A stretch of DNA of 64,000 nucleotides from Pocillopora damicornis (taxonomy: Eukaryota): assembly GCF_003704095.1 (NCBI RefSeq), contig NW_020843614.1, forward strand, positions 372,001-436,000, in the 5' to 3' direction. A program made the position numbers and the translations under genes. Positions 5,246-64,000 of the stretch are shown piece after piece (within the stretch, counting starts at the first letter, position 1; every line of letters begins with the position of its first letter). Under the pieces are notes generated by a model, which made no database searches, was not told the DNA's origin, and saw only the letters and a list, made by a program, of their open reading frames with translations.

Positions 5246-8042
5246 ATGGGTAACATAAGCGATGTCGAAAAGACCATTGAACGAAAGCCCAAAGAAGCAC
5301 AATTATTATATGCCGCTGAAAATGGGCAAGTTGATAAGTTACAAGCCCTTCTTTCCGAGAAGGACGTTCAGGTAGACTGCCCAAATAGTTCTGCTGTTAC
5401 AGCTTTATTTCTGGCAGCGAAAGAAGGACACGATGAATGTCTCAGGCTGTTACTTGAAGCTGGAGCAAAAGTAAACGGCATCGGGCTTGGTAACACAGCA
5501 CTAACGCCGCTGTGGGTAGCGACTTACGCCGGTCATAAAAACTGCGTGGAAAGATTGGTAAAAGCAGGTGCCGATCTCAATACAAAGTTTCCTGAAACAC
5601 CTTTGTTTATTGCGGCACGTGAAGGAAAGGCAGACTGTCTCAAGATTCTAATAGAAGCTGGTAGTAATGTTAATGTTAAGAACAATCGAGGACAAAATCC
5701 AATGCATATTGCTTGTTCAGAAGTTCACGAGAGCTGTGTAGAACTTTTGGTAAGTGCAGCGACTTTGAGTGACTTACAATAATCAAATATTTGGCTCGGA
5801 CTGCGAAATTATTACACCATAGAGTGGCAAAGTAGCAGGGGGGGGGGGGTGCACTGCACTCAGGGAGGGCTTGTGGCCAGTAGTTGATCATTGTAACCCG
5901 GAATAATCCTATGGTTAGCTTTACGTAAAATATTTCTTTTAAGGCAAGGGGTCCTGGCTTGTCATCCTAAGGCATCGTTTAATCTATCAGCATCTTGGTA
6001 TCTTGCTCTGAGTAACTTTATCAGATCAATATTAGTATCTGGGAAACTACCCACCTACCCCTCCCCTAACCCAGCAACAGTCTATCGATAACAACTTCGG
6101 GTTAATGTTGGGTTAGGGGAGGGGTAGGTGGGCAGTTGCCCAGATACTGATATTGATCCACTTTATCCTTACAACTTAAATTTTTCCCTGTTTTGCATCA
6201 TCATAGGCAAACACAGAATGTGAATTGGATGCTATAGATCAGAGTGGTTGTACTCCTTTGCACCATGCATGTATCAATGCACCAGATGGTCACAGTTCAG
6301 TCAAGGTATTTATAGTTACCTTTCGAACTTTCTTTTAATAAATCATGCATGTGAAGCTCGGTTTAAGAAATGAATTTGAAAGTGATCTTTGCAGTAATGA
6401 ACACTGTCTAGGCAGTATTTAAAATAAGGCCTGAAAAAAAATTCAGGTCTGTATGGGATTTGAACCCAAGACCTTTGCAATACTGTTGCACTGCTCTACC
6501 AACTGAGCTAACAAGCCCACTGGGAGCTGGTCATTATGTTGGTTCATATTAAACCTGTGAAGTGATGACTAAATGACTGTAAGTATATGAAAATCATACT
6601 TGTCAACTGCAGTTTAAGAATTGAATTTGAAAGTAACATTTGCAGTAAAAGTTACCTTTTTATTGGCAATAGTTACATTTATACTACTGACTTTAAAAAA
6701 TAATTATAATAGAAGCAAAGTACTTTCAAGAGTTTTTCTAGACAGCTTAAGAAGTAAGAAAAGCCCTCAACAAGAAATTCTGATGTACATGCCTTGGATA
6801 AGAAGCTATGACATACATTACATGCTTTTTCTTTTACTTGTTGATAATATTCAATTGTTGCACAAAAGCTTCACATCAAATCCCTGGGGTTCATTCAGAA
6901 TTTATAACTCATGTAAATTTATGAAAGAAAATTACAGAAGTCCATAACTATGCTAGTATTTTTAGACAACTATGCTTTGATACTTTAAAACTTGGCACAA
7001 TTGCAAAAGAAAGGCATCTGTGCTGGACTTCATCAAACTCTATAGAACTCTTTGGTAGGGAAACATTTGACTGTGATCTTTATTATAGTGGTCATGTATG
7101 ATGAAAACATTGCAAAAGTTTCAAGACTTTTTAAGTTGAAAGGTTGTAAAATTTATGCGAAGGTTTTTTTCAACATCTTACTCTAGGAGTTTTCAGTTTG
7201 TGTTTTTATGTGGAATATTTTCAACAAAGCAGTTACTATGCAAAGTAATTAGAGCTGATCAGAAGCATTTTAGACCTTAGAAAGGAGAATGGTGTAATGT
7301 GTCCTTTCAAAATTTACTGTGTACAGGTAACACAAGAATATTCTCTCAATTGTCATTTAGATGCTTGTGCAAATGGGAGCAGCAGTAAATATTTCTTCTA
7401 GATGTTGGAACCATGCCACATCCTTGCACTACTGTTCACAACTTGGAAAAATAGAAAATGTCAAACTTTTAATAAAATATGGTGCGAATGTGTTCATAAA
7501 AGACAAATGTGGTCAGACGGCAAGAGACAGGGCTCAGAAATACCCAGAATGTGAAAAACTTCTTCAACAACAAGAAGGTGTTTCAAAACCTTATCCTATT
7601 ACTCATTGCATATATTTTGTACATTTTTGTGTAATTTTTGTTTGTGGTAGAGTAAACCTCACTGTTTTCCTTTTTAATCCACTATTTTTATGTGTGTTTC
7701 CTTCTGAAGCAATTGTTATAATGGTTTCTCTAAGTTATCCACAAATCTTCCCATAGAAGAGAATATCATTGAAATGCTCTTTCCCAAATCTCATACAGAA
7801 ACCACTGAGAAGGACCTTACTAATATCATATACTGACTACCTGACGAATTTGATTATTATTATTATTATTATTATTGTTTGTTATTATTATTAATCAATA
7901 ACTTTTACCCTGACACACAGCTAGACCATCAAGCTTGCTCCAGTTGAGTTGCTGGTCACTCAGAGGAACCCTGGGAACTAAAGGTCTCAAGAAAGTACAT
8001 GAACTGCCAATACCACTGACTCTCAAACAGTTTTTACTATAA
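5246..8042 (+). CDS. Ankyrin repeat and SOCS box (ASB-family) protein
   Basis: Exons 5246-5749, 6207-6305 (99 nt, one ankyrin repeat), 7361-7577, 7921-8042. Multiple ankyrin motifs (TALFLAAKEGH, TPLWVATYAGH, TPLFIAAREG, TPLHHAC, TSLHYC). The last exon encodes a SOCS box, PSSLLQLSCWSLRGTLG...VHELPIPLTLKQFLL*. Confidence 0.9.
6024..6158. mobile_element. Palindromic MITE with long terminal inverted repeats
   Basis: gatcaatattagtatctgggaaactacccacctacccctcccctaaccc at the left end is near-perfectly inverted as gggttaggggaggggtaggtgggcagttgcccagatactgatattgatc at the right end. Confidence 0.85.
6350..6650 (-). repeat. tRNA-derived repeat flanked by direct repeats
   Basis: The minus strand of about 6445-6520 reads ggcttgttagctcagttggtagagcag...gggttcaaatccc (Pol III A and B boxes). 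gtttaagaawtgaatttgaaagt...tttgcagtaa is repeated at 6361 and 6612. Confidence 0.7.
7852..7893. repeat. (ATT)n microsatellite
   Basis: Direct inspection. Confidence 0.9.
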
Positions 8043-9726: not shown

Positions 9727-11630
9727 ATGGATAATGATAGCTCCCCGGTTTTATTTGAACGTAACATAGAGGACAACGGAACAGCAACGGAGGAATGTGC
9801 GATTGGTTCAAACCCAGTTTCACCGAATTCAAATGATTCACTGATACCTGAGAAAAAAGATCAGCAGGATTCAAAAACTGACCAGAAACCTTTGAAAAGC
9901 TCAGATGTAAGCTTGATTTTGAGTGATGATGTCAACGGAGACCCAGTTTGGCTGCAAATCGATGAAGAAACTGTATTAAAAGTCGAAGAGCATCGTGAAA
10001 TGGGATGGAAACAAGAGTTTGTCGAGAGGGTAAAGAGAGCATGCATCCTCGGTATAGGAGGAGTGATTTTCGTTCCTATTATCACTGGTGAGACACTTCT
10101 TTAAAAAAATTGTTTTTTCTTATACTTTCAAATACTAATTTAGGAATTCTTTAGTTCTTGGTCACAAACTGAAGCTAATTTGACCGACTGTCGAAAAACC
10201 AGAAGAACGAACAAAAAAGTTGCTCTATTCCGCAAATTTCAGAAGCACATTAAATTTTTTCATAACCAGAAAAATCATATACAACTTTAATCTGAAACGT
10301 GACAAATTTTACTCTAACAGCAGCTGGCGCAGTCAGCCCTCCTGTTCTCCTTGCACAAAAGTGGACGAACGGACGAGAAAAAGGTAGATACTCTACCATT
10401 GGCTTGGGCGTTTTGGTTGGGACACTATTTCTCCCGATCTTGGCACCTTGGGGTATCTACAAGCTGTTTAAACGTTTTTATACAATATTACCGAAGAAAG
10501 TTGATTATTGGATAAATCGTTGGAACGGCGATGTCACAAGCCCCCTTGGGAAACACCACTATGAAAATGGCTCAGTAGAGTTCAAAATTCCAGAAAGCAT
10601 TGTTATTAACACTGATCGGGCTCAAGTCTACAGTCCTGATCTAGGAGTTCCGAGCACAAGTCAGCTTGTGACACCTGATAGTCACATAAATGTGGATTGG
10701 TCAAATGTTAGCGACCAAGAAGATGTAAACGAAGCCCAAGTAGAACGAGTCAAGGCGTTTTTAGAGGGATTAGAATACAACATCGGGCATTTCGACAAGG
10801 TGGAAGAATATTACCGAGAATGCTGGTTGAATGAAGGACAGGAAGTTTTATCTGACGTGGAAGACGACGACGGGCGCCTTGACACTCAGCTGTTATGTGT
10901 CAGAAAAGTTGTGTCCGACACTTTTGTCAATGCAAAAACAGCTGAAGTAGATTTTAATATGTGCGAATTTGCCGCCGGCCTCTGCAGTAGTAGGTGTTTA
11001 ATTAATCAAAGACCTCATGAAGTGAGTCAAGCATCAAGAGGAAAAGATACTGATGGAACTTTAAAAGGCGGAAAATCTCCAGGCAATTTAGAAGAGAACT
11101 TTTCCGAAGCTCAGATAACAACACAAGTATCGGACAAAAGTTGTGCTCCTCTGAATGAAGATGTCGAGGGCCTTCCTGAAATGAGACCAAAAGATCAAGT
11201 ATCAGATGGCAGCGGTGCTCCCTTGTGCACTGGCACAAAGGACCTCCCTGAAAAGGGACCTAAAAAGAAGGCCAAACGAAGACGCAGAAAGCGAACTGGC
11301 GAGCAAGTGTCGACAAAAAATCACACCAGTTCTACGACAGGCGAAGATAATGACACATCGCATTCAAACCCTACGACACCGCTCTTACAGCAAGAGGACA
11401 AAGAAACAGAGAGAGCCACTGAAGTACAAGAGGACAAAGAGATAACACCTGAAAAGAAGCTTGGAAAAACTGGAAATGCAGCCCGAGAAGCCAACACTCC
11501 TTCCACAAACCAGTTGGTCACAAAAAATGAAATGTCTGAAATACTCAGAATTAACGGGCAGTTTGAACTAAAGCCGAGCGATGAACCAAAGCGCTGTCTT
11601 TACATGGCTCACTTTAATCACATTGATTAA
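9727..11630 (+). CDS. Uncharacterised protein of about 556 aa with two hydrophobic segments and a basic NLS-like tract
   Basis: Exon 1 is 9727-10087 (G|GTGAG). Exon 2 is 10321-11630, or starts at 10324 (CAGCAG acceptor). The join is in frame (PIIT-AAGAVSPP). Long open frame; no family recognised. Confidence 0.7.
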
Positions 11631-15024: not shown

Positions 15025-16341
15025 ATGGATCTGGTGTACCATGATAGCTCTCTATCACTCGTCGCTAACGAGGAGTGTGGAATAAGATCCTGCAGGCCTC
15101 CAAGAATTGAAGAATTCCCTCCTGATCTGTTCAACCAGGAGCAGAGATTTTACGGTGGAGTTACGTTTCATCTTCTAGTTTGCCTCCATATCTTTTGCGC
15201 TTTGACTGTTGTCTGCGACGACTACTTCGTGGCATCGCTGAACCGAATCACCAAATGTTTGGGTCTTAAACCAGATGTGGCCGGTGCTACCTTCATGGCT
15301 GTGGGAAGCTCCGCACCGACACTCTTTATCTCAATAATATCGACATTTTTCACAGAAGGAGACATCGGCCTCGGAACAATAGTTGGCTCGACTATATTCA
15401 ACACACTTTTCATCATAGCCTTGTGTGGTATTGGCGCTGGTTTGACGATGCGTTTGAAATGGTATCCGCTTTTTAGAGATTCTACCATGTATGTAATTAG
15501 CGTGATCATCTTGATGATTTCGATTTACGATCGGAAAGTTCATTGGTATGAAAGCGCCGCGTTTTTCATCTCATACTCTGTTTACATTATTGTGATGTAT
15601 TTCAACTCAAATATTGAGGAATGGTCCATGAAACTGAAAGATCGGATAATAAAACCCAACGCCGAAGCAGATTCTGAAGTTGATGAGAAAGGTCAAGATA
15701 CTGAAGCTGAAACTTTAGAAAATGATTCCTCCCACGAGGAAGAAAATCGTTTTAAAACACCAAAAGGATTTTTCTCAAGGATAGTTTGGATTTTCACTTT
15801 ACCTTCCATAGTTTTATTTTATATAACAATTCCAGATTGCCGTAAGAAGGAATGGCGAAAATTTTACTTGGTAACATTCACAGTTTCGGCCTTCTGGATG
15901 GGTGGGTTATCGTACATTTTAGTCTGGATGGTTTCCCTCGTGGGATTCACTTACAATATCCCAGAATGCGTCATGGGTATGACATTCCTTGCTGCGGGCA
16001 GCAGTCTCCCAGACGCCATCGCTAGCTTGGTGGTCGCTAAACAAGGAAGCGGAGATATGGCTGTATCAAATTGTATTGGCAGCAATGTTTTCGACATGTT
16101 ATGCCTTGGAATTCCATGGATGATCAAAACTACTATAATCACTCCGAGCAGTGTAGTTCACATTCAAAGCGAGAACATATTTTTTACTTCAGGGATTTTG
16201 ATAGCTAGTATCATTTGTACAGTGTTACTGATAGCTCTTAACAAATGGCGGTTAGACGAGAAACTAGGCGTTATTTTTCTTGTTATGTATTTGATTTTTC
16301 TTGGTATTGCTACATTTATCGAAGTGCTGCCTTGTTGCTGA
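15025..16341 (+). CDS. SLC24/NCKX-like K+-dependent Na+/Ca2+ exchanger, intronless CDS (paralogue A)
   Basis: EFPPDLF, VCDDYFVASL, alpha-1 DVAGATFMAVGSSAPTLF, GTIVGSTIFN, PLFRDS, TIPDCR, alpha-2 GMTFLAAGSSLPD, GDMAVSNCIGSNVFD. Confidence 0.92.
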   Translation: MDLVYHDSSLSLVANEECGIRSCRPPRIEEFPPDLFNQEQRFYGGVTFHLLVCLHIFCALTVVCDDYFVASLNRITKCLGLKPDVAGATFMAVGSSAPTLFISIISTFFTEGDIGLGTIVGSTIFNTLFIIALCGIGAGLTMRLKWYPLFRDSTMYVISVIILMISIYDRKVHWYESAAFFISYSVYIIVMYFNSNIEEWSMKLKDRIIKPNAEADSEVDEKGQDTEAETLENDSSHEEENRFKTPKGFFSRIVWIFTLPSIVLFYITIPDCRKKEWRKFYLVTFTVSAFWMGGLSYILVWMVSLVGFTYNIPECVMGMTFLAAGSSLPDAIASLVVAKQGSGDMAVSNCIGSNVFDMLCLGIPWMIKTTIITPSSVVHIQSENIFFTSGILIASIICTVLLIALNKWRLDEKLGVIFLVMYLIFLGIATFIEVLPCC

Positions 16342-16843: not shown

Positions 16844-18736
16844 ATGGATCGACTTCCCAGGAAACTCAGCGTCCTTCATCATATTCGTCACGTTAAACGG
16901 CACTTCTTCAACTGTAGCAGCCACAATATTATCAATGTACTGCAATATGAAACGCTGTTCTCACTGCAGCAGAGGCGAGAAGGAGCCGTTGTTATACACA
17001 CCCTGGTATGCCTGTACTGCTTTGGGGCACTAGCAGTTTTGTGTGATCATTATTTTTGCGCGTCACTTGAAAAACTATGCAAACGGTGAGTAGTATAGTT
17101 ATCTTTGGTTTTTAGAGATGAACGAAAGGGATACGTTTTTGCATGATGTGTACATTTCAGCCTTTTTACATCTTTAGATTCAGCAAGCAACTGAAATCTT
17201 TTAGGGCACACAGTGTCTGAAAACAATTGTAACTGGCTAACATCACTACACTTTTTGCTTCTAGAGTTCACAGATTAACTGTAAAAATGTCCAAAAAGTA
17301 ATAAAAAAAACTGTTTGCGTTAATTTGGGAGGTACATTTACTAAGCTTTAGAAGTCAAAAACTGATGTTTTAAACTGATGTTCAAAATACTTTTTACTCG
17401 CTTTAGACTACGTATCCCGACAGACGTTGCAGGCGCAACATTCATGGCTGCTGGTAGTTCTATGCCCACACTGTTCATCGCAATTGCTTCCGTATTCATG
17501 GGTGAGGGTGATATAGGCCTGGGTACTATTATTGGTTCAACTATGTTCAATATCCTCTTCATATCGGCCATTTGTGGGCTGTGTTCTGGTATCTCTATAG
17601 CTCTTCGGACGTGGCCGCTTTTGAGGGATTCTGTGGCATACACTATACATCTGACCGCTCTGTTAATTGTCATAGAGGATAACATAGTTCACTGGTACGA
17701 AGCCTTGGTGTTTCCATTCTTATATCTTGGTTACATAATAGTTATGTGCTTCAATAAGAAACTCGAAGGTTTGTTTGAGAGAGTTTGCGAAAAGTTTTTC
17801 CATTTACGGAAGGGATTTGAAATGGTCTCAATGGAGGACCCCCACGAAAATGCCGTTGGGAAAGGCAATGGTCAGGAAGCCCTGGAAAAATCCGGGGAAG
17901 AGGATTTAAGAAACAACGAAATTATTACCGACAAAAGCAAGAATGAAATGAAAGACACTGACTGCGGTAGAGAAGGAAGGGGAGTCAATGATCCCGATAC
18001 CTCCTCTTCTCAAGCTCATGGTTTTTCAGAAAAATCTCCGTTCGAAATTCCCAAGAGTTCTTTTCAATTAGTGATCTGGGTGATCATGTTACCTGTCCAC
18101 GCCCTTTTCTTCCTCACAATGCCCGACTGTCGCAAGAAAGGTTGGGAGAACTGGTACCCAGTCACGTTTGTAGTATCCATCCTATGGATGGCCCTCATAT
18201 CATACGTACTCGTGTGGACTGTGTCAGTCATAGGCGAGACTTTTGATATACCAGAATGCATCATGGGACTGACACTATTGGCAGCTGGTTCTAGTGTCCC
18301 GGATGCTATTGCAAGTCTTGTAGTCGCTAAACATGGAATGGGAGACATGGCTTTGGCTAATTGTGTTGGTAGCAATATCTTTGACGTCCTCTGCTTAGGT
18401 CTTCCATGGTTTTTAGCCACGACTGTTGTTCATCCGAAAAGCGTCGTTTTAATTCACAGTGGACATGTAGTTTATACATCTTTGTGCCTGTTTGGCACAG
18501 TTTTAGCAACATTATTCGTGATACACCGAAATAGTTGGAGATTGGATAAACGTTCGGGAGGTATACTATTGTTAACCTATATTGTTTTCTTATCAGCGGC
18601 TGTCATTTTAGAAGCTCTTCCCGGGGGGCCTGGAGGTCAGGGGGATGGTCCTAAATTAAGTCCACATCACCCGGGTCACCTGCCAAATAAGGGCCTAGGG
18701 CATCACAAAAATGCTCATTTAAAGAAAGTCACGTGA
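16844..18736 (+). CDS. SLC24/NCKX-like exchanger (paralogue B)
   Basis: Exons 16844-17085 and 17407-18736 (CG|A join, CKR-LRIP). Same alpha-1/alpha-2 motifs (DVAGATFMAAGSSMPTLF; GLTLLAAGSSVPD; GDMALANCVGSNIFD). An upstream acceptor tttcag ending at 16796 suggests a 5'UTR intron. Confidence 0.92.
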
Positions 18737-25800: not shown

Positions 25801-28800
25801 CAAATAATTTTTGATCAAACAATTTTTGTACTGCAGGGTCAAAAGAGACTCAAATTTCATTTGTTAAATTCTCACATTGGAGCTACCATATAAGTCTCAT
25901 TTTGATGACCATTTTTGTGCTTGGTTAAACCACACTCCTCTCCTTTCTTCTGAGCCAAACTGACAGATGTCTGTCCAACTTACCATGGTTCAGAAGAAAC
26001 TGTACCACAGGAATCAACACTCTTTTCCATCTGTTGAAATCAGAGGTAACTCGAGCATAAAGTCTTCTTATAATCTCAATAAGTTTGGGAATCAAAGACT
26101 TGTCCATGGAGCATAGAACATCCAAATTGTAGATAACTTCAACCAGACACTGTTAAGATAATCAAATGATCAAAAGACACCCAAAATCATTATTTTTCCT
26201 ACTGAAATCTACCAGTTATTGTAGAAAATCATTAGATAAAAATAGATTCTAGTTTTAAAGCCTCTAGCAAATGTTCACTTACAGCTTCAATTAACATAGC
26301 ATCCTGTTGCTTGCTTGGTTCTATTGGAAAAAATAATAAATTTTACACGATACTTTTATCATATTGATAAAATCAAACATAGCAACAAAGAGTTTAATCA
26401 TGGTAATCCTGTATGCAGTTTGGTTTTTCATGGTAAAAAACTACCCTTACTTCTTTCACTTTGTTCCAGAAGCCTCAAGCAGTATTCACAGGCCCTCTCT
26501 TTCAGTTCTTGTTCACCACTTTTCACTCCATGAGGACTTGACGGGAATAATTTTGAGAAACTTAAAGTTGACAGACTTCTTTTATGTTTTCCTCTCTTTG
26601 ATGTATGCTGAGCCTGGTCCTTGGTACCAGGCTCTTCAGGATCACATGAAAAACTTAAAGGAGTCTGGGGTCTAGAATCACTACCACTTGACAATGACTG
26701 GTCATCTGTGGGGATAGTCAGGGATTGGCCAGGCATAGGGGACTGACTTAGCAACTGGCTCTCAGAATCTTGTGGAGAGGATCGCGACAAAGGAATAATA
26801 AAACCAGTGGATGACTGCGAATCAACAGAGATATTATCCATACTTGACTGACTTTGGTTCAAGGCATTTTGAGAGGGTGAGCTAGAGCGATAACCTGGCT
26901 GACTGAGATTCTCCACAGAGCCTGAATTTGAGGCAGTTGAAAAGATCAGTGGTGATGCACCTCCCCTTGGAGAATTAGAATTTGAGATGGTATTTATAAA
27001 CTTAAGATGACGAAGCCATGATCGCAACATGGAAAAGCTGTGGATGTTTAAGATTTGGTCAGGAAAAAAGTACTGTGCTGTGGAACAGAGTAAACAAACA
27101 AACAATGATTAGTTAAATGTAGGTCTTTTTCCCATGACTGCAACCAAAATGTTTGCTGCATGGATTGCTGCTCTCTCAAAAGCTACTGATAGATATAACA
27201 GATAAACAAAATTGAATATGGACCAACTGGAATTTAATTAGGCCCCTTTAGACCAACTGGCCTAAGTAAGTAGGAATTAAGGAGGTAAGTTTCTAAAGAA
27301 ACTGTGGTGCTGTGTCAATGGGGGAGTATAACAAGATAATTTTAGTTTAATCAACTGAGTTGTAAAGATGATGTACATTGGCTACATGAAGAGTTTCATA
27401 TCTGACATTTTGAGGGTTAGCCCTTTGTAATTCACTCTCATAAAGGGCTAACCCTCGAAATGTCAGCTTTGAAACACTTAAAGGTGGCCAATTTACATTA
27501 TCAACTCAGTTGATAAAATCAAATTAAGTGGGAACTAGTTTGGGGTTTGCATTATTAGGTACTAAAAATAGACTCATGAGGTATCTTTAACAGTCATGTA
27601 ACCACTTAGACTGCTAGATGGAGAAAGTAACACAGGCACTATGGGTCAGAGTAAGTCTCTTTTCCAACAAAATAAACTACACCATGTCCTTATATCAAGC
27701 TACACAGTGAAGCTTGGTGCTCAGTTTATCAGGTAGCCTCTAGATAGACAGCAGTTAAACTTGAACATGTTCGTGAACAGACTTTTATTAGATTAAAGCA
27801 CTACAAGCGCATTATATAAAAAAACAACAACAAATTATTAATAAATTTAGACAAATGAGCTTACCAATACTCAAGACTGTAAAAAAGTATCTTGATGATG
27901 TTCCATCGACCTCTGTAACAAGTTGGTACTATAAAAAAAATGACAGGTGTTTCATTCTTTACAATAGCTGAACCACATACATACCATAACAAGGAAATAC
28001 CAAAGACTGTCATTTTAATAGAAGGTACTTAAATTAAATAAAAGTTTAGGCTTATAAATCCTCTCAAAAGACACATCACACAAAGGTTGTAGTTTTATGT
28101 TCAACTAATGATGAATGACAACAATAAATTGATACAGATCTATTGTATAAAAATAATACAGTTTCTTTCAACATTAATTTTGTTCAAATTATACTACCAA
28201 CCCCCTTTGATTTTCCTCCTCCAAAAATCTGTCTCTGATAAGGATTTGGTGCTGATACTGTGCTAGCATTTTTCAGCCAATTTGCCATTTGACGACTCAC
28301 TGCTCCAGCATCATCTGTGACATCAAGTAAACATGTCAAATATTTCATTGTTTGCTCATTTTCAAGTTAATCTACTCCCTTTGCAAATACAGTTGAATTA
28401 CTGGAATGAGTTTTGTAAGGTAAAGATCTTGTAGCTTGTAGTTTTTCTAACTATGATAAAAAACTTTCTGCTACTCAATACACTATTTTTATCATCTTCA
28501 TGAAGTGTTTAAAGGAAAGTTGCTCAAATTGGATTCTGTGTGTTCATTACAAATTGCAAGTCAATTGTACTATATACAAACATTTTAAAATACCAAAAAT
28601 AGCAAATGAATTAAGAAGAATAAAAAATATTTTGGATAAAGAAGCATTTCACTTCCAAATATATACTGATACAAACCTTGCGATATCAAGTTATCATCTG
28701 CATTTATTAATAATTGTAAAGAACCAAGTGACAATGTTTGTAACTCCACAGGCACCGCAGGTTTTGTTAGCCATCTGCAAGTTAAGAACATAACAAGTCA

Positions 28801-30344: not shown

Positions 30345-31020
30345 ATTGAAAACATCTGGTTGGGGATAGCCGCTGGCTATTACAAAGCATATTCCAAGGC
30401 CCGTAACACGGGTCTGCAATGCGTTCAAAGAAGAAAGGGTTATAAAATTTACCCAGTCATTAAACTATGAGGTTTAGAACAAATAAGGTTTAGTGGGTAC
30501 TTTAATGGTTAAAAATTTAAAATCCAAGAACTCAAATGCAGGATATGATACACACATTTACCAAATGTCCATCGATTTATCCTTCCACCTTCTCATTTAC
30601 AGTCCCCCGCCTACCAAACACCTTCATAGATAACTCGTCCCCAAGCCTGAGGGGTTTTTGTTGTGGCTGATACTCGACAAGCTTTGAAATAACAGAAAGT
30701 GGTAAGTGTGCAAAAGAAGGCTTATGATTTTATAAACTCAGCTTAGCCATTTTCAGTTCATTTTTCTCGTTGCTCAGTTATAGCAAGCTGTAGTTCTACC
30801 AATTTATGATAAGCATCCATTCAAATTGTTTCGAAAACGAAACCGTGAATGTATTCTCCTGTATAATAACACCAAATTTTCTTGACTAATGTACAAAACT
30901 ACCTCACCCATTTCATCTTAGCTTAGTCATGACAAACCCCATTCATTAAATTTGTCATGTATTTGAGATTTGTTTTGTTTGTCCTTACTCAGCCGGAGTG
31001 ATTCTGTGAGACAAGAAAAG

Positions 31021-32653
31021 ATGACTAGTAATTTGCCCTCCCTTCCCTCAGAAGTAATTGAAAAGATAGTTGCTTTCTTGCCGCTGCCAGACGTCTGCAT
31101 CTGTATGTTGGTATGCAAAGAATGGAAAGTGAGTAAAGACTGTCCATATGAAAACTTTTGGTTTTAAAAGTCTCCATGGCAATTATTAAGATGTGACAAA
31201 AATTTGACATAAGTTTTCCAAATCCCAACAGGCAAGTAATCTCTCTATGGGATACATTTGTCTCTTGTTCTGTAATAATAGCAGAAGATCTTACTATCTT
31301 ATTTTAAACTTCTTTGATGTACCTCTTCAAATCATCTATGAACTGTGTCAAAAGAAATAACAAAACAATTACTACTCACTTAAAATTAAAGACTAGCCAA
31401 AATAGTCATGAATTTTTTTTGTGTTTTATTTTTTATACATCAGGAAATGTTTTCATCAGAGCAGTTTAGTAAAAATTATGTGCTCAACCATTACAATTTT
31501 GATGATGAAGAACAACCTAGTGGACATCTTTATGCGTGGTCTGACCCAGAGGAATGGTTTCATTACTGGGATGACAATGAAGATAATTCCAATGTGTGGG
31601 TGTTTTCTAATCCTCCAAAGCGCTGGAAATGTGGCATTGTTCATTTAGCAAGTTACTCACTTGTCTCAGATAAACAGCTAAAGTATAAAAGTTTCCTCCG
31701 GGCTGTGTACATTTTGAGCAGAATAAAGAAGGCTGCAGAGGAGCTTGGACTGGATTGTGGTAAGTAAGACTAGGAGGATTCAGGGTTCATTTCCAAGTGG
31801 ATGCCCCAAATATTCCAAGATTAAATAAAAAAAAAAACAAATCACAACAACTATACTTAGTGATTGGCTGTAACCTTTTCACTCCTAAGAGCTTAAAGTT
31901 GATTTTCCTTGCTAATGGGTACATTTCTTTGTTATCTGGTTCTGAGTCAAGAGTATTTCCCTAGTCAACAATCTTCTCAGTTTATTCTCATTGCCTGCCA
32001 GTTTACAATGTATTAAAAAAGGTAAGGATAATTTATATGGTGGATACTCCTAGTGTCAAAGGTTTATAAACTTGTGTCCCTTTCATTTGTGAATATAACA
32101 CCATTTGTGATTTTTTAATGTGGATCTTTTCTTGCTGAAGTGTTAGTCAAATTGTTATGGCTGCTTTGCTTTTTGTTTTAACTTTTTCTTTATAGAAAAT
32201 GAGCAGTGAACATTGTCTTATTCAATAAGGTATGTTTTTTCTGTAATAGGTGCTTGGGCAAATGAAGGCTCTGGATTGATAGAAACATGCTTATTTCCTT
32301 GGGATAAAGATTCCCTCCCCACAGCTACAGATATAATTTCACTTTATGGTTTCAATCCTGAGATGCAAAAGAACCCACTGGTGAGGGGTGAAGGTGAAGA
32401 CAAGGATAGTGGTGATGAAAGTAGTGATGATGAGGAAGATGGAGGCTGTGTTCGTTGGAAGTCTTTAAGTACATCATATGATGTTGATGTGAAGAAAGCT
32501 CATGCTTTCTTTGACTGGATGAAGGAAATTTTTTCCCCTTATATTCAAATTGGTATAGGTTGTGATGCAATGAATCCAGTTCCTTGTTTCATTTTGGCAA
32601 AACTTGCTCCAGGTTGGGTGGGGGGTTTACTTTCTTCATTGGCTCTGACTTAG
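31021..32653 (+). CDS. F-box protein with an atypical (possibly NuiA-like) C-terminal domain
   Basis: Exons 31021-31128, 31444-31759, 32250-32653 with consistent phases. N-terminal F-box LPSLPSEVIEKIVAFLPLPDVCICMLVCKEWKEM. Likely 5'UTR donor at 30702; head-to-head with AP5Z1. Confidence 0.85.
31870..32066. mobile_element. Degenerate piggyBac-like MITE in an F-box gene intron
   Basis: taaccttttcactcctaaga ... tagtgtcaaaggttta; about 200 bp, same layout as 18775-18979. Confidence 0.5.
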
Positions 32654-33270
32654 TCTAGTTTGTGCATGTATTATTCATTAAATTGAAAGAATGACATTGT
32701 GAATTAGATAATTAATTTAATGCAAAAATACTTCCCATTGAGAGAAGTTACAGCTAGAGTTAATCCTCACTAACAGACAAAGACTAATGTGTTGAGGAAG
32801 CAAAATACACTACACTGCAAATAAATACTAAATAAACACATACTATAACAAAAAAGACATATGCACATTATACAGTTACTGGAAATACATAAATCTATAC
32901 TTTACCCCAATGCATTCATATTTAATCTAAGTGAATCACATGCAATTTCTAGGGGGGGGAGAGGGGGGTACAATTATATTATAGAAAATCATGAGACCAT
33001 GAGCACTTTACCAAATAGGTTCTACATGTTGTTAAAGTTGTTTCATTGAATAAATATTGAGAAAAGATTATTTCTGAAGCTAACAAAATTTTGTAGGCTA
33101 GATTAGTCAAAATGCTAAAGGCAAAAGGCAGATAACATAATCAGGATAACCACATGAGGTGATGTACCATATGAGGTAAATATTCTACATCTAACTTCAC
33201 AAACTAAAATATTTAAAATGAGGATATCCATTGGGCCTCAGTTTCTCTTAGTGTTTTAAATGTGTTTGTT

Positions 33271-34358: not shown

Positions 34359-35297
34359 TCAGGGTTGTGAAATTTTTCTCTCAACGGTATAGTCAGCAAT
34401 TGATACTTTATTCGTCGGTAACCAGCAGCAAATATACATTCGCAACTCCTGCCTGAATCTTTGACTTTGAAGAGTGTAAATGATCGGATTCAAACACGAG
34501 CTTAAACCAACAGGTATCACACAGGCGTGGTAAATAATGGACCCATATTCCACCAAGCCAGGAACGTGATAGGCAAGCAAGTATGAAGTCACATCAGGAA
34601 GCCAACACAATGCGTGAAGCACCGTCACTGTTACTGCAATTTTCGTGATTCGCTTGCGTGATTTGATTACGACTAATGAAGTGCCCGAAATTATAGATGG
34701 GCCCCAAAGAGTTTTCAGAGTCTTGGCGTATAGAACAGCCATCAGTACAAGAGGAACTGAAAAGTCCACAACGAAGGTAAAGACGGTGTAAATCTTGCCA
34801 TATACAAGTTTAGACCAGTTTTCAAAGCATGATGAATGATTTTTGTCATAAATCATTACGGTCATTGGAGGAATCTCGGAAAGAATGGCAAAAATCCAAC
34901 CACATACAATAACCATTATTAGTTTTCTCTTTGATAATTTTCGTGCAATGTTGCCAGTTCGAGTGGCATAGAAGCGTTCGATGGCGATCACAACATGCAT
35001 GACAGTAGCAGTACACCCTCCAACCCACATAGTGAACCCCCCAGTAAACAGCTTACAAAGCAAGGTTCCAGCCCATCCATCAGGGTGGGTATATACAGGA
35101 CGAAGCACATATTGAGGGATCAGAGATGTTGCCACCAGAATGTCGGCCAGTGCTAAGTTGAGGAAAAGGTAGTTGATTGAAGTCTTGAACTTCGAGCGAA
35201 TCAAAGCAAGTACTACTAGCAAGTTTGGAATCAAATTTAAGATCATTAAAAGGAAGAAAACCCCCGACAAAATATTTTGCGTCCTATCATTTACCAT
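34359..35297 (-). CDS. Class A (rhodopsin-family) GPCR, neuropeptide-receptor-like, single coding exon
   Basis: Seven hydrophobic segments; NLALAD (TM2), LCK, IAIERF (DRY-equivalent), CFENW, CWLP (TM6), NPIIY (TM7). Splice signals at about 35329 and 35560 suggest a 5'UTR intron. Confidence 0.93.
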   Translation of the reverse strand: MVNDRTQNILSGVFFLLMILNLIPNLLVVLALIRSKFKTSINYLFLNLALADILVATSLIPQYVLRPVYTHPDGWAGTLLCKLFTGGFTMWVGGCTATVMHVVIAIERFYATRTGNIARKLSKRKLIMVIVCGWIFAILSEIPPMTVMIYDKNHSSCFENWSKLVYGKIYTVFTFVVDFSVPLVLMAVLYAKTLKTLWGPSIISGTSLVVIKSRKRITKIAVTVTVLHALCWLPDVTSYLLAYHVPGLVEYGSIIYHACVIPVGLSSCLNPIIYTLQSQRFRQELRMYICCWLPTNKVSIADYTVERKISQP

Positions 35298-62559: not shown

Positions 62560-63614
62560 ATGAAGAGAGGAAGGGGACGGCCACCTAAAAATAAGGTTCA
62601 AAGCTCAAATTCGCCAGATGTCTCGAGTGCAATCAACCAACATGGCGGACACCGCAGTCCGCGTGTCTCTTCTTCTATGGCCATTAAAACTCGAGGTTAT
62701 AGCGGAACAACACCACGTAAATACTACGGGATGGAATCTTCCGATTCCGATAGCGACAATGAATCTATTTCTAGTCATGGATCTTCCATTTCAAACACTA
62801 CCAGCTCTAAAACTCGTTATGTCGAGCCCTTGAAAGTGGTAACTCCTCTAATTTTACCGCCGTCATCTGACGATCTATTGCTCGAGCCAGAGTGTATTTT
62901 GCAAGCGTTAGGGATTTACGAGGTTTTAAGACATTTTAGTCGCATAGTACGACTCTCCCCCTTTAGATTTGAAGACTTTTGCGGGGCAATCCAAACTCCG
63001 GAACAATCTTCGTTACTTGCACAAATTCACATCGCTCTACTACGCTTTTTGTTGTCTGAGGATGATGCGAGTGGCTTGACATTCGTTGCTACCGACGAAA
63101 AAGACAGCTTCAACATTCTCTCCTACTACTTAGGTGACTTTACTTGGCCTGAACTTATTAGAAGCTACATCTCGTCAGATAAGACCGAATTTGGAGACAC
63201 AGTTACGGCTGTTAGTGGACATGATGAAGATCCGTTCCCTTTTACAACAGTCGAGAACAGATTGAAGGTTCTCCAGCGACTTTGTGATCAATTCTTGGCC
63301 TCTAATTCAGTCAGATACGACATAATGAATGAAGGAATAGTCGAATCAGAGGATCATTGTCGCAATTGCTGCAAAATGGGCGATTTACTGTGCTGTGAAA
63401 GTTGTCCTGCAGTTTACCATCTTCACTGCCTGAAGCCGCCGTTAGAAGTGGTTCCCGAAGGCGATTGGCTGTGTCCCGTATGCGAGGCTCACCAAATCAA
63501 AGGTGTCACGGACTGTTTACCTGATTGGAACAGAGAAGGTTGGCTAAGAAACGCCCCTTTAGGGGTAGACAGGGAAGGAAGAAAGTACTGGTTCTTAGCC
63601 AGACGTTTGTTTGT
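62560..63614 (+). CDS. BPTF: Nucleosome-remodeling factor subunit BPTF/NURF301, first exon; gene continues beyond the right edge
   Basis: AT-hook RGRGRPPK, LPPSSDDLL, DDT domain (ALGIYEVLRHF..VRLSPFRFEDFC), PHD finger (DHCRNCCKMGDLLCCESCPAVYHLHCLKPPL..VPEGDWLCPVC), LGVDREGRKYWFLARRLFV. Donor GT|GTAAGT after 63614. Confidence 0.95.
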
Positions 63615-64000
63615 GTAAGTATTTACTTCCAACATGGTTGACATGGTATATTTTCATCAGAACGATTGCAGTGGTCTTTACCTTTCGTTGACCATCTTTG
63701 CATGGCTAACTACTGACTTCCTTCACATTTGTACTTTTTTGATAGCTGTTTTTGGCATGATGAAGTATGGTTGAACTTAATGCATTTGTTCTTTGTTCTA
63801 TTTTTGCAAGCTTTTTTTTTTTTTAATTAAAATCAATTTTATTATTTAGGGCCACAGCCATCACATCGCTTAAGGGGATCAAATAATAAGCTGGATATAA
63901 ATTAAATAGATTAATTTTTTCTATTTTCCTGCACCACTCTGATTGCAAATAAGCTTACATGCCAAAGTGTAGGATTTGAGTAGGCTTATTAAAGTGGGTC

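What the first reader, a model, noticed from the sequence alone, without database searches (positions are those of the whole stretch)
31700..32653. F-box protein whose substrate-binding half looks like the bacterial nuclease inhibitor NuiA
Seen: after the F-box, the protein has no LRR, WD40 or Kelch repeats. It ends in ILSRIKKAAEELGLDCGAWANEGSGLIETCLFPWDKDSLPTATDIISLYG ... acidic loop ... VKKAHAFFDWMKEIFSPYIQIGIG..NPVPCFILAKLAPGWVGGLLSSLALT*. Recalled from memory: Anabaena NuiA reads ILEQLKQASDGLLFMSESEYPFEVFLWEGSAPPVTHEIVLQQTG ... AKFQKLLEVIKSNLKNPQVYRLG..DVYVIGETPAGNLAGISTKVVET*. The segments correspond in order along the whole domain. The two residues that engage the NucA active site (Glu24 of the SE motif and the C-terminal Thr) have apparent counterparts here (NE, terminal T). 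Inference: an SCF adaptor that uses a nuclease-inhibitor fold to bind, and possibly ubiquitinate, a beta-beta-alpha-metal nuclease (EndoG/EXOG-like or microbial). The domain could be of ancient or horizontally acquired origin.
Basis: partly seen in the sequence, partly recalled or inferred. Interest (0 to 1): 0.85.

Follow-up and report, generated by a model that had tools for sequence, protein, structure and literature searches.

The report
Coral F-box protein with NuiA fold
An expressed stony-coral gene encodes a ubiquitin-ligase adaptor (F-box protein) whose target-binding half is predicted with high confidence to have the fold of NuiA, a bacterial nuclease inhibitor. It keeps counterparts of NuiA's two active-site-plugging residues, so it may inhibit and destroy a DNA-cutting enzyme, but no binding has been tested.

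Summary
Window 30672-32966 (+) holds a four-exon, polyA-expressed gene. Its splice joints appear in RNA contigs of four studies. It encodes a 275-aa protein with an N-terminal F-box (Pfam E 5e-10) and no LRR, WD40 or Kelch repeats.

Sequence methods do not support the link. Pfam NuiA and NuiA_2, a profile search of PDB, hhalign (P 0.065 and 0.66) and a profile search of 5.8 billion proteins all find nothing. This is therefore a NuiA-fold domain, not a demonstrated member of the NuiA family.

The loop Glu (N-E) and the chain-ending Thr are kept in four deep clades. Thr never occurs without Glu (67/24/11/0 of 102 sequences), but a tree-aware test is not significant.

The closest precedent is the F-box plus SUKH immunity domain of FBXO3, so I rate this a new variant of a known kind.

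The parts
30672..30700 (+). 5' untranslated exon. Its true 5' end may lie further upstream.
   Evidence: The transcript contig L160 aligns here at 100%. The joint 30700>30992 (GT..AG) appears in one RNA run.
30992..31128 (+). Exon holding the start codon (ATG 31021-31023) and residues 1-36. This is most of the F-box.
   Evidence: Pfam F-box E 5.2e-10 and F-box-like E 8.2e-9 on window:31021-31128. A GT donor follows at 31129. The joint 31128>31444 appears in four RNA runs.
31444..31759 (+). Exon encoding residues 37-141 plus the first base of codon 142. It holds the end of the F-box and its linker helices, a family-specific W-rich segment (conserved P-x-R-W-x-C-G) and helix 1 of the NuiA-like domain.
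   Evidence: 100% identical to residues 42-146 of the transcript-derived protein P0076. The secondary structure comes from the AlphaFold model.
31690..31759 (+). First part of the NuiA-fold domain: long helix 1, residues ~119-141 of the 275-aa protein.
   Evidence: VIA-align matches model residues 124-280 of P0076 (119-275 in the 275-aa numbering) to NuiA chain 2o3b_B residues 1-135.
32250..32653 (+). Coding part of the last exon: residues 142-275 and the TAG stop. It holds the rest of the NuiA-fold domain.
   Evidence: ORF and translation. It is preceded by an AG acceptor at 32248-32249. The joint appears in four RNA runs. ESM Atlas hits for this exon are all NuiA or NuiA_2 clusters.
32261..32266 (+). 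Asn146-Glu147, the N-E motif in the loop between helix 1 and strand 1. It is the proposed counterpart of the S-E motif (Glu24) of NuiA.
   Evidence: Both hhalign runs place N-E opposite NuiA's invariant S-E, although neither alignment is significant. A loop Glu is present in 78 of 102 family sequences.
32384..32446 (+). Acidic, low-confidence insertion (R-G-E-G-E-D-K-D-S-G-D-E-S-S-D-D-E-E-D-G-G) between strand 2 and helix 3. It may act as a DNA-backbone mimic (inference).
   Evidence: pLDDT falls to 51-73 here. D/E-rich insertions of varying length lie at the same place in all subfamilies.
32648..32650 (+). Thr275, the chain-terminal residue. It is the proposed counterpart of NuiA Thr135, which coordinates the nuclease's Mg2+.
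   Evidence: ACT is followed by TAG at 32651-32653. The model's C-terminus aligns with the C-terminus of NuiA (280<->135). 67 of 102 sequences end in Thr exactly 13 residues after the first Gly of the G-W-V-G-G motif.
32654..32966 (+). 3' untranslated region. It runs at least to 32966, and RNA contigs continue to 33000 and beyond.
   Evidence: L160 aligns to 32966. RNA contigs cover the stretch up to 33000.

Best explanation
Shown: this is an expressed four-exon gene of a Pocillopora-type stony coral. It encodes a 275-aa protein with three parts. The first is an N-terminal F-box, the module that docks on SKP1 in SCF ubiquitin ligases. The second is a family-specific W-rich linker. The third is a C-terminal ~155-residue domain predicted with high confidence to have the fold of NuiA, the intracellular inhibitor of the Anabaena nuclease NucA.

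Inferred: the NuiA-fold domain is the substrate receptor and binds a beta-beta-alpha-metal nuclease of the NucA/EndoG/Endonuclease_NS family. The target is most likely one of the coral's own enzymes. The coral has EndoG, EXOG and a large set of secreted paralogues. Binding would follow the NuiA mode: the terminal Thr275 reaches the catalytic Mg2+, the loop Glu147 occupies the scissile-phosphate site, and the acidic insertion lies in the DNA groove.

The F-box would then hand the blocked nuclease to SCF for ubiquitination. The outcome would be an 'inhibit and destroy' safeguard against nuclease activity in the cytosol or nucleus.

My odds: F-box 0.97, NuiA fold 0.9, nuclease as target about 0.45.
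For: Gene and expression: the exon joints appear in polyA RNA contigs of four studies. A spliced transcript contig matches the model. P0076 is identical in exons 1-2 and 131/133 in exon 3. The NCBI protein P0080 is 275 aa with 4 differences.

F-box: Pfam 39.2 bits. Foldseek matches SKP1-bound F-boxes with probability about 1.0.

Functional residues: S-E and the terminal T are invariant in 13 cyanobacterial NuiA sequences. The family has N-E in the equivalent loop and ends in T at the equivalent position in four deep clades. T never occurs without the loop E. NuiA's terminal Thr binds the Mg2+ of NucA (PMC5587815, PMC2790893).

Context: the genome holds at least 32 Endonuclease_NS exon matches. 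These include EndoG, EXOG and single-exon secreted forms. One relative carries a WGR domain, the DNA-break-binding module of PARPs, in front of the F-box.

Precedent: a bacterial nuclease-immunity domain (SUKH) serves as the substrate-recognition part of the F-box proteins FBXO3 and SKIP16 (PMC3113570).
Against: No sequence method links the domain to NuiA. Pfam PF07924 and PF23151 were not hit by any of 45 members even at E 10. Profile searches of PDB did not find NuiA. hhalign gave P 0.065 and 0.66. The family profile finds nothing in genomes that carry NuiA. A profile search of 5.8 billion proteins returns only family members.

The shared fold could therefore be old divergence with a change of function, or convergence. 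The tool itself warns that a shared fold shows no function.

E and T are lost in several subfamilies, including the coral's own second paralogue. The E/T coupling is not significant once the tree is considered: 2-3 concordant pairs of 5, p about 0.25.

No residue-level superposition was available, so the equivalence of Glu147 with Glu24 rests on loop position and on a non-significant alignment. The structures are predictions.
Confidence: 0.45

Rival explanations
1. The NuiA fold is kept only as a scaffold. The domain is the substrate receptor of an SCF ligase, but its target is not a nuclease. In the same way, the eukaryotic SUKH domains of FBXO3 have moved away from nuclease immunity.
For: There is no detectable sequence similarity to NuiA. 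Several subfamilies lack both the Glu and the terminal Thr yet keep the rest of the domain, notably the very conserved P-G-W-V-G-G strand. So the fold is under selection for something other than the NuiA plug. The authors of PMC3113570 argue that eukaryotic F-box-SUKH proteins took on new targets.
Against: The polypeptide ends at exactly the NuiA position, in Thr, in four clades that are only 25-35% identical. These clades always also have the loop Glu. That is hard to explain without a NuiA-like use of the C-terminus. The acidic insertion and the WGR fusion point to DNA-related partners.
Confidence: 0.33
2. The mechanism is the same as in the best explanation, but the target is a foreign nuclease. 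The protein would be an innate-immunity adaptor that neutralises and degrades nuclease toxins or effectors of bacteria, symbionts or viruses that reach the coral cytoplasm.
For: NuiA-type and SUKH-type proteins act against bacterial nucleases. The family has a patchy distribution across Anthozoa, Branchiostoma, Lingula and one euglenid transcriptome entry. That pattern is typical of conflict-driven genes. Corals live with dense microbial communities (general knowledge).
Against: The gene is single-copy for this subtype, with no lineage-specific expansion. Its sequence is well conserved among coral genera at 55-85% identity. This fits a housekeeping target better than an arms race. The host itself has many candidate nucleases.
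Confidence: 0.1
3. The resemblance has no biological meaning. It would be either a small alpha/beta sandwich that AlphaFold or the aligners match to NuiA by chance, or convergence, and the domain would have an unrelated origin.
Against: Two independently modelled members, about 30% identical, both put the two NuiA entries at ranks 1 and 2 of 350,542 chains. Coverage is 96-97% of NuiA and runs terminus to terminus, with a gap of 4-5 Z units to the next chain. A search that does not rely on Foldseek also ranks NuiA first. Language-model features independently return only NuiA families.
Confidence: 0.08

Closest known systems
NuiA, the intracellular inhibitor of Anabaena/Nostoc nuclease NucA (PDB 2O3B chain B, 1J57; Pfam PF07924). 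Also the Pfam family NuiA_2 (PF23151).
   Same: The predicted fold and order of secondary-structure elements are the same, aligned over 130-131 of 135 residues from first to last. There is an acidic residue in an x-E motif in the loop between helix 1 and strand 1. The chain ends in Thr directly after the last strand.
   Different: No significant sequence or profile similarity exists, and neither Pfam model is matched. The coral domain carries a ~25-residue acidic insertion. It is fused to an F-box and a W-rich linker, whereas NuiA is a free-standing ~135-aa bacterial protein. It is encoded in an animal genome with introns. Nuclease inhibition is unproven.
FBXO3, SKIP16 and fungal F-box-SUKH-4 proteins: F-box fused to a SUKH (SMI1/KNR4) domain derived from bacterial nuclease-toxin immunity proteins (PMC3113570).
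   Same: The same architectural idea applies. A domain that neutralises nucleases in bacteria sits where an F-box protein carries its substrate-recognition module.
   Different: The fold is different. No SMI1_KNR4 Pfam hit was found. The SKP1-FBXO3 structures 9kbf/9kbd match only the F-box and linker part of the model, residues 9-134. FBXO3 also has an ApaG/DUF525 domain and is widespread in eukaryotes. This family is small and patchy.
Drosophila EndoGI, the nuclear protein inhibitor of EndoG (PDB 3ISM; PMC2790893).
   Same: The proposed role is the same: an animal protein that guards the nucleus and cytoplasm against a stray NucA/EndoG-family nuclease, using acidic residues in the DNA groove and contact with the metal site.
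   Different: EndoGI is an all-helical tandem-repeat protein, unrelated in fold, and works by stoichiometric inhibition without a ubiquitin-ligase module.

Membership tests
F-box proteins (SCF substrate receptors; Pfam PF00646/PF12937) | F-box motif scoring above the Pfam gathering threshold | tested here: met
   window:31021-31128 scores 39.2 bits (cut-off 20.5) and 35.5 bits (cut-off 24.3). 17 of the 45 sequences in alignment A1 match both models; many of the rest are fragments without an N-terminus.
F-box proteins (SCF substrate receptors; Pfam PF00646/PF12937) | Three-helix F-box structure like those bound to SKP1 | tested here: met
   Foldseek matches SKP1-SKP2, SKP1-FBXO31 and other F-boxes with probability 0.98-1.00 and rmsd 1.2-2.6 over 38-49 columns.
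F-box proteins (SCF substrate receptors; Pfam PF00646/PF12937) | Binds SKP1 and assembles with CUL1-RBX1 | not tested
This needs a pull-down or co-folding.
NuiA (Pfam PF07924) / NuiA_2 (PF23151) | Match to the family's profile HMM | tested here: not met
   No hit for the exons or for any of 45 family members, even at E 10. There are no PF07924 or PF23151 matches anywhere in this genome.
NuiA (Pfam PF07924) / NuiA_2 (PF23151) | Profile-profile or profile-sequence similarity to bona fide NuiA | tested here: not met
   hhalign against 13 cyanobacterial NuiA sequences gives P 0.065 (A1) and 0.66 (A4). Profiles against PDB sequences do not find NuiA. The profile finds no hit in NuiA-bearing genomes. 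None of 97 profile hits carries a NuiA Pfam domain.
NuiA (Pfam PF07924) / NuiA_2 (PF23151) | NuiA three-dimensional fold over the whole domain | tested here: met
NuiA (Pfam PF07924) / NuiA_2 (PF23151) | Glu of the S-E motif (Glu24) in the loop before strand 1, which enters the nuclease active site | tested here: inconclusive
   N-E lies in the equivalent loop, and both hhalign alignments put it opposite S-E, but neither alignment is significant. It is conserved in four clades and absent in others. No residue-level superposition was available. The role of Glu24 comes from my own knowledge of Ghosh et al. 2007, which is not held in the library.
NuiA (Pfam PF07924) / NuiA_2 (PF23151) | Thr as the C-terminal residue, coordinating the nuclease's Mg2+ | tested here: met
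   This covers presence and position only. The chain ends ...A-L-T followed by a stop. The model's C-terminus aligns with residue 135 of NuiA. 67 of 102 family sequences end the same way. Metal coordination itself was not tested.
NuiA (Pfam PF07924) / NuiA_2 (PF23151) | Tight 1:1 inhibition of a NucA-type nuclease | not testable with these tools
   This needs biochemistry.
SUKH / SMI1-KNR4 F-box proteins (FBXO3 type) | SUKH (PF09346) domain after the F-box | tested here: not met
   No Pfam hit. The FBXO3 structures align only with the F-box and linker region of the model.

The most novel reading that the evidence does not exclude
Some animals have a dedicated SCF ubiquitin ligase whose receptor is a NuiA-type nuclease inhibitor of bacterial descent. 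It would plug the Mg2+ site of an EndoG/NucA-family nuclease with its C-terminal Thr and a loop Glu, and at the same time mark the enzyme for degradation. This would be the first eukaryotic NuiA-type inhibitor and the first 'inhibit-and-destroy' control of a beta-beta-alpha-metal nuclease. The WGR-bearing relatives would be recruited to DNA breaks.
Probability: 0.4. Interest if true: 0.8.

Novelty: new variant of a known kind. Interest (0 to 1): 0.62.

Why it matters
F-box proteins are defined by what their variable half recognises, and this family is annotated only as 'uncharacterized protein'. A NuiA fold in that position gives a concrete, testable guess at the substrate: a NucA/EndoG-type nuclease.

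It would be a second, independent case, after SUKH in FBXO3, of a bacterial anti-nuclease module being recruited into the eukaryotic ubiquitin system.

If the mechanism holds, it would show how an animal with dozens of non-specific nuclease genes protects its own nucleic acids. It would also provide a natural protein that both inhibits and degrades EndoG-like enzymes, which take part in cell death.

If the target proves not to be a nuclease, the finding still adds a new substrate-recognition fold to the F-box repertoire. It would also extend the NuiA fold to animals beyond the reach of sequence methods.

Tried and rejected
Sequence routes to NuiA all came back empty. These were:
- Pfam and NCBIfam on the exons.
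- Pfam on 45 members at E 10.
- phmmer and profile searches of PDB sequences. The only weak hits were unrelated (4r8o at E 0.049, and a CWC22 acidic stretch).
- hhalign against 13 NuiA sequences.
- The family profile against five NuiA-bearing cyanobacterial genomes.
- The family profile against 5.8 billion proteins.

My starting guess, that the C-terminal half would be a SUKH/SMI1-KNR4 domain as in FBXO3, was rejected.

Complex prediction: I submitted the secreted coral nuclease L142 (residues 46-396), Mg, and the NuiA-fold part of P0076. 

The E/T co-occurrence looked striking in raw counts but is not significant with independent pairs on a tree. I do not use it as proof.

Literature searches for NuiA with F-box, and for 'nuclease A inhibitor', found no description of this architecture. 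The key NuiA-NucA paper (PMID 17138564, PMC2072808) is not held.

Exons were searched by reference. The database proteins P0076 and P0080, which are near-identical to the window's product, stood in for the spliced product.

Full report
**1. What is in the sequence**

The window is AT-rich animal DNA (GC 0.29-0.42). Around the finding lies a gene on the + strand. I first modelled it from ORFs and splice signals. Its exons are:
- Exon 31021-31128: 36 residues from the ATG, with a GT donor at 31129.
- Exon 31444-31759: 105 codons plus one base.
- Exon 32250-32653: residues 142-275 and a TAG stop.

Two sources confirm every joint:
- A 1210-nt transcript contig from a public run (L160) aligns in four blocks. 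It adds a 5' untranslated exon ending at 30700 and a 3' UTR reaching at least 32966.
- Contigs from four polyA or oligo-dT RNA-seq runs of four different studies carry the joints 31128>31444 and 31758/9>32249/50, both GT..AG. One run also carries 30700>30992.

The gene is therefore real, spliced as modelled, and expressed.

For steps that need the whole chain I used two database proteins:
- P0076 is transcript-derived and 280 aa. It is identical in exons 1 and 2, matches 131/133 in exon 3, and has five extra N-terminal residues from an upstream non-ATG start.
- P0080 is an NCBI 'uncharacterized protein' of Pocillopora verrucosa, 275 aa, with four differences from the window.

The host genome is 234 Mb in 4393 contigs. 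I infer that it is a Pocillopora stony coral.

**2. Checking the observation**

- The F-box is confirmed (PF00646 at 39.2 bits, PF12937 at 35.5 bits).
- Neither the exons nor the full-length proteins match LRR, WD40, Kelch or any other Pfam or NCBIfam model after the F-box.
I fetched 13 NuiA genes from cyanobacterial genomes. They read ...L-K-Q-A-S-D-G-L-L-F-M-S-E-S-E-Y-P... and end ...T-K-V-V-E-T. In these 13, the S-E pair and the terminal Thr are invariant.

**3. Is the C-terminal half NuiA-like?**

Sequence methods say no:
- No Pfam NuiA or NuiA_2 hit in any of 45 members, even at E 10.
- No NuiA hit from family profiles searched against all PDB sequences.
- hhalign P-values of 0.065 and 0.66.
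- No hit of the family profile in five NuiA-bearing genomes.
- A profile search of 5.8 billion proteins returned 97 hits, all family members and none with a NuiA annotation.

Structure says yes:
- An AlphaFold model of P0076, built on a 45-sequence alignment, has mean pLDDT 90.1 and pTM 0.88.
- Foldseek against 350,542 PDB chains ranks the NuiA chain of the NucA-NuiA crystal (2o3b_B) first, with E 1.3e-2, probability 0.99 and target TM 0.61. It ranks the NuiA NMR entry (1j57) second. Nearly all the remaining high-probability hits are F-boxes matching the N-terminus.

Protein-language-model features for exon 3 alone, and for the whole domain, returned only NuiA or NuiA_2 clusters. The scores were 0.89 and 0.81, so these are leads only.

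I conclude that the NuiA fold is well supported (about 0.9). Membership of the NuiA sequence family is not shown. Common descent is plausible but not demonstrated.

**4. The two functional residues**

In the NucA-NuiA complex, the C-terminal Thr of NuiA coordinates the catalytic Mg2+ directly (PMC5587815 and PMC2790893). That Glu24 enters the active site is from my own knowledge of Ghosh et al. 2007, which the library does not hold.

In the coral protein:
- Asn146-Glu147 sits in the loop between helix 1 and strand 1.
- The chain ends in Thr275 directly after the last strand.
- In the superposition, the model's C-terminus coincides with that of NuiA.

Among 102 family sequences with both regions complete:

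| Loop Glu | Terminal Thr (13 residues after the first Gly of G-W-V-G-G) | Sequences |
|---|---|---|
| yes | yes | 67 |
| no | no | 24 |
| yes | no | 11 |
| no | yes | 0 |

On a tree of the domain core, the E+T state occupies four deep clades: hexacorals, a clade holding the named octocoral members, the P0024/P0133 clade, and P0056. The states without E and T form other clades.

The tree-aware test has too few independent contrasts to be significant. In 2-3 of 5 pairs the two traits change together, never in opposite directions, and p is about 0.25.

They are not invariant across the family. Their coupling is suggestive, not proven.

All subfamilies carry an acidic, disordered insertion at the same place. 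This resembles the DNA-mimicking acidic surfaces of other nuclease inhibitors such as EndoGI.

**5. Family and distribution**

The family is small: 52 representatives at E <= 1e-3 among 1.84 billion proteins. Named members come from:
- Hexacorals: Pocillopora, Stylophora, Montipora, Oculina.
- Octocorals: Paramuricea, Dendronephthya.
- Amphioxus (Branchiostoma).
- The brachiopod Lingula.
- One euglenid transcriptome entry, whose origin I did not verify.

All are labelled uncharacterized, hypothetical or 'F-box domain-containing'.

Wherever the N-terminus is present, it holds an F-box.

One transcript-derived relative (P0033) carries a WGR domain in front of the F-box, at E 8e-22. WGR is the DNA-break-sensing module of PARP1-3 (established knowledge).

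The coral genome has one copy of the E/T type, which is this gene. It also has one distant paralogue on contig C4129 whose chain ends ...G-V-W and lacks the terminal Thr.

**6. Candidate targets**

The genome gives at least 32 exon-level matches to Endonuclease_NS (PF01223), the family of NucA, Serratia nuclease, EndoG and EXOG. They include:
- An EndoG-like gene on C2891, with the motif D-R-G-H-L-A-A-A.
- An EXOG-like gene on C4204, with the motif S-R-G-H-M-A-P-A.
- Tandem clusters of cysteine-rich paralogues. Some are complete single-exon genes with signal peptides (L142, L148).

None lies in this window. The neighbours are Na/Ca exchangers, a GPCR, an ankyrin protein and a DDT-PHD protein.

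It gives no verdict either way.

**7. Mechanism**

Shown:
- An expressed F-box protein.
- A predicted NuiA fold.
- Counterparts of NuiA's plug residues at the expected places.

Inferred:
- The domain binds a beta-beta-alpha-metal nuclease in the NuiA manner.
- The F-box delivers that nuclease to SCF for ubiquitination.
- Together these act as a cytosolic or nuclear safeguard. This parallels NuiA's role against mis-sorted NucA and EndoGI's role against stray EndoG.

I put the nuclease-target step at about 0.45.

Rivals:
- A non-nuclease substrate on a retained scaffold (0.33).
- A foreign nuclease as target (0.10).
- A resemblance without biological meaning (0.08).

**8. Comparison with what is known, and novelty**

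The closest structural relative is NuiA. The closest conceptual relative is the F-box plus SUKH architecture of FBXO3, SKIP16 and some fungal proteins. There, a bacterial nuclease-immunity domain became the recognition module of an E3 adaptor (PMC3113570).

I found no paper describing an F-box-NuiA architecture or an animal NuiA-like protein.

I rate this a new variant of a known kind. It is interesting because it names a testable substrate class for an orphan F-box family and extends the NuiA fold to animals. It is limited by the absence of any interaction evidence.

Noticed in passing
G000 contigs C3583, C3984, C1952, C2502, C4204, C799, C3469 (loci L142-L153): The coral genome has a large expansion of Endonuclease_NS (PF01223) genes: at least 32 exon-level matches, several in tandem clusters. 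Some are complete single-exon genes with signal peptides and many cysteines (L142:1363-2553:-, L148:1360-2643:-). EndoG-like (C2891, L156) and EXOG-like (C4204, L144/L146) genes are also present.
   Followed up: partly
G000:C4129:93587-96457 (-) (loci L164-L166): This is a second, distant paralogue of the F-box/NuiA-fold family in the same genome. Its chain ends ...G-W-C-G-G-V-L-T-G-V-W and lacks the terminal Thr. It is the counterpart of Montipora P0046/P0179.
   Followed up: partly
protein P0033 (Logan transcript contig, 431 aa): A relative has the architecture WGR domain (PF05406, E 8e-22), then F-box, then NuiA-fold domain. A related Paramuricea fragment (P0135) is named 'PARP3' by its source, yet has no Pfam hit itself.
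   Followed up: partly
window 31540-31690 (residues ~70-118): Between the F-box and the NuiA-fold domain lies a conserved W-rich segment (W-x-x-P-x-x-W, then P-x-R-W-x-C-G-I-V). It is modelled with high confidence but matched no known fold. It may pack on the NuiA-fold domain.
   Followed up: no
window 15025-16341 and 17378-18736 (+): Two tandem long ORFs each carry two Na_Ca_ex (PF01699) halves (E 1.6e-51 and 2.9e-48). These are the paralogues that another first-stage note calls NCKX.
   Followed up: no
window 34359-35297 (-): A single-exon rhodopsin-family GPCR ORF (7tm_1, E 1e-34) lies about 1.4 kb beyond position 32966 of the F-box gene's 3' UTR, on the opposite strand, so the two genes converge.
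   Followed up: no
window 62560-63618 (+), 5246-5782 (+), 26428-27105 (-), 10299-11630 (+): Other coding pieces are present. One exon carries DDT, WHIM1, PHD and WSD domains and resembles a BAZ/WSTF chromatin-remodelling subunit. There is an ankyrin-repeat ORF and a fragment matching the AP-5 zeta TPR region. A 443-aa open frame has no Pfam hit.
   Followed up: no
window 31097, 31707, 31718, 32323, 32369, 32467, 32627: RNA contigs from different studies differ from the window at several exonic positions. The database proteins differ at 2-4 residues. This is probably allelic or between-species variation within Pocillopora, not editing. No DNA from the same individuals was checked.
   Followed up: no
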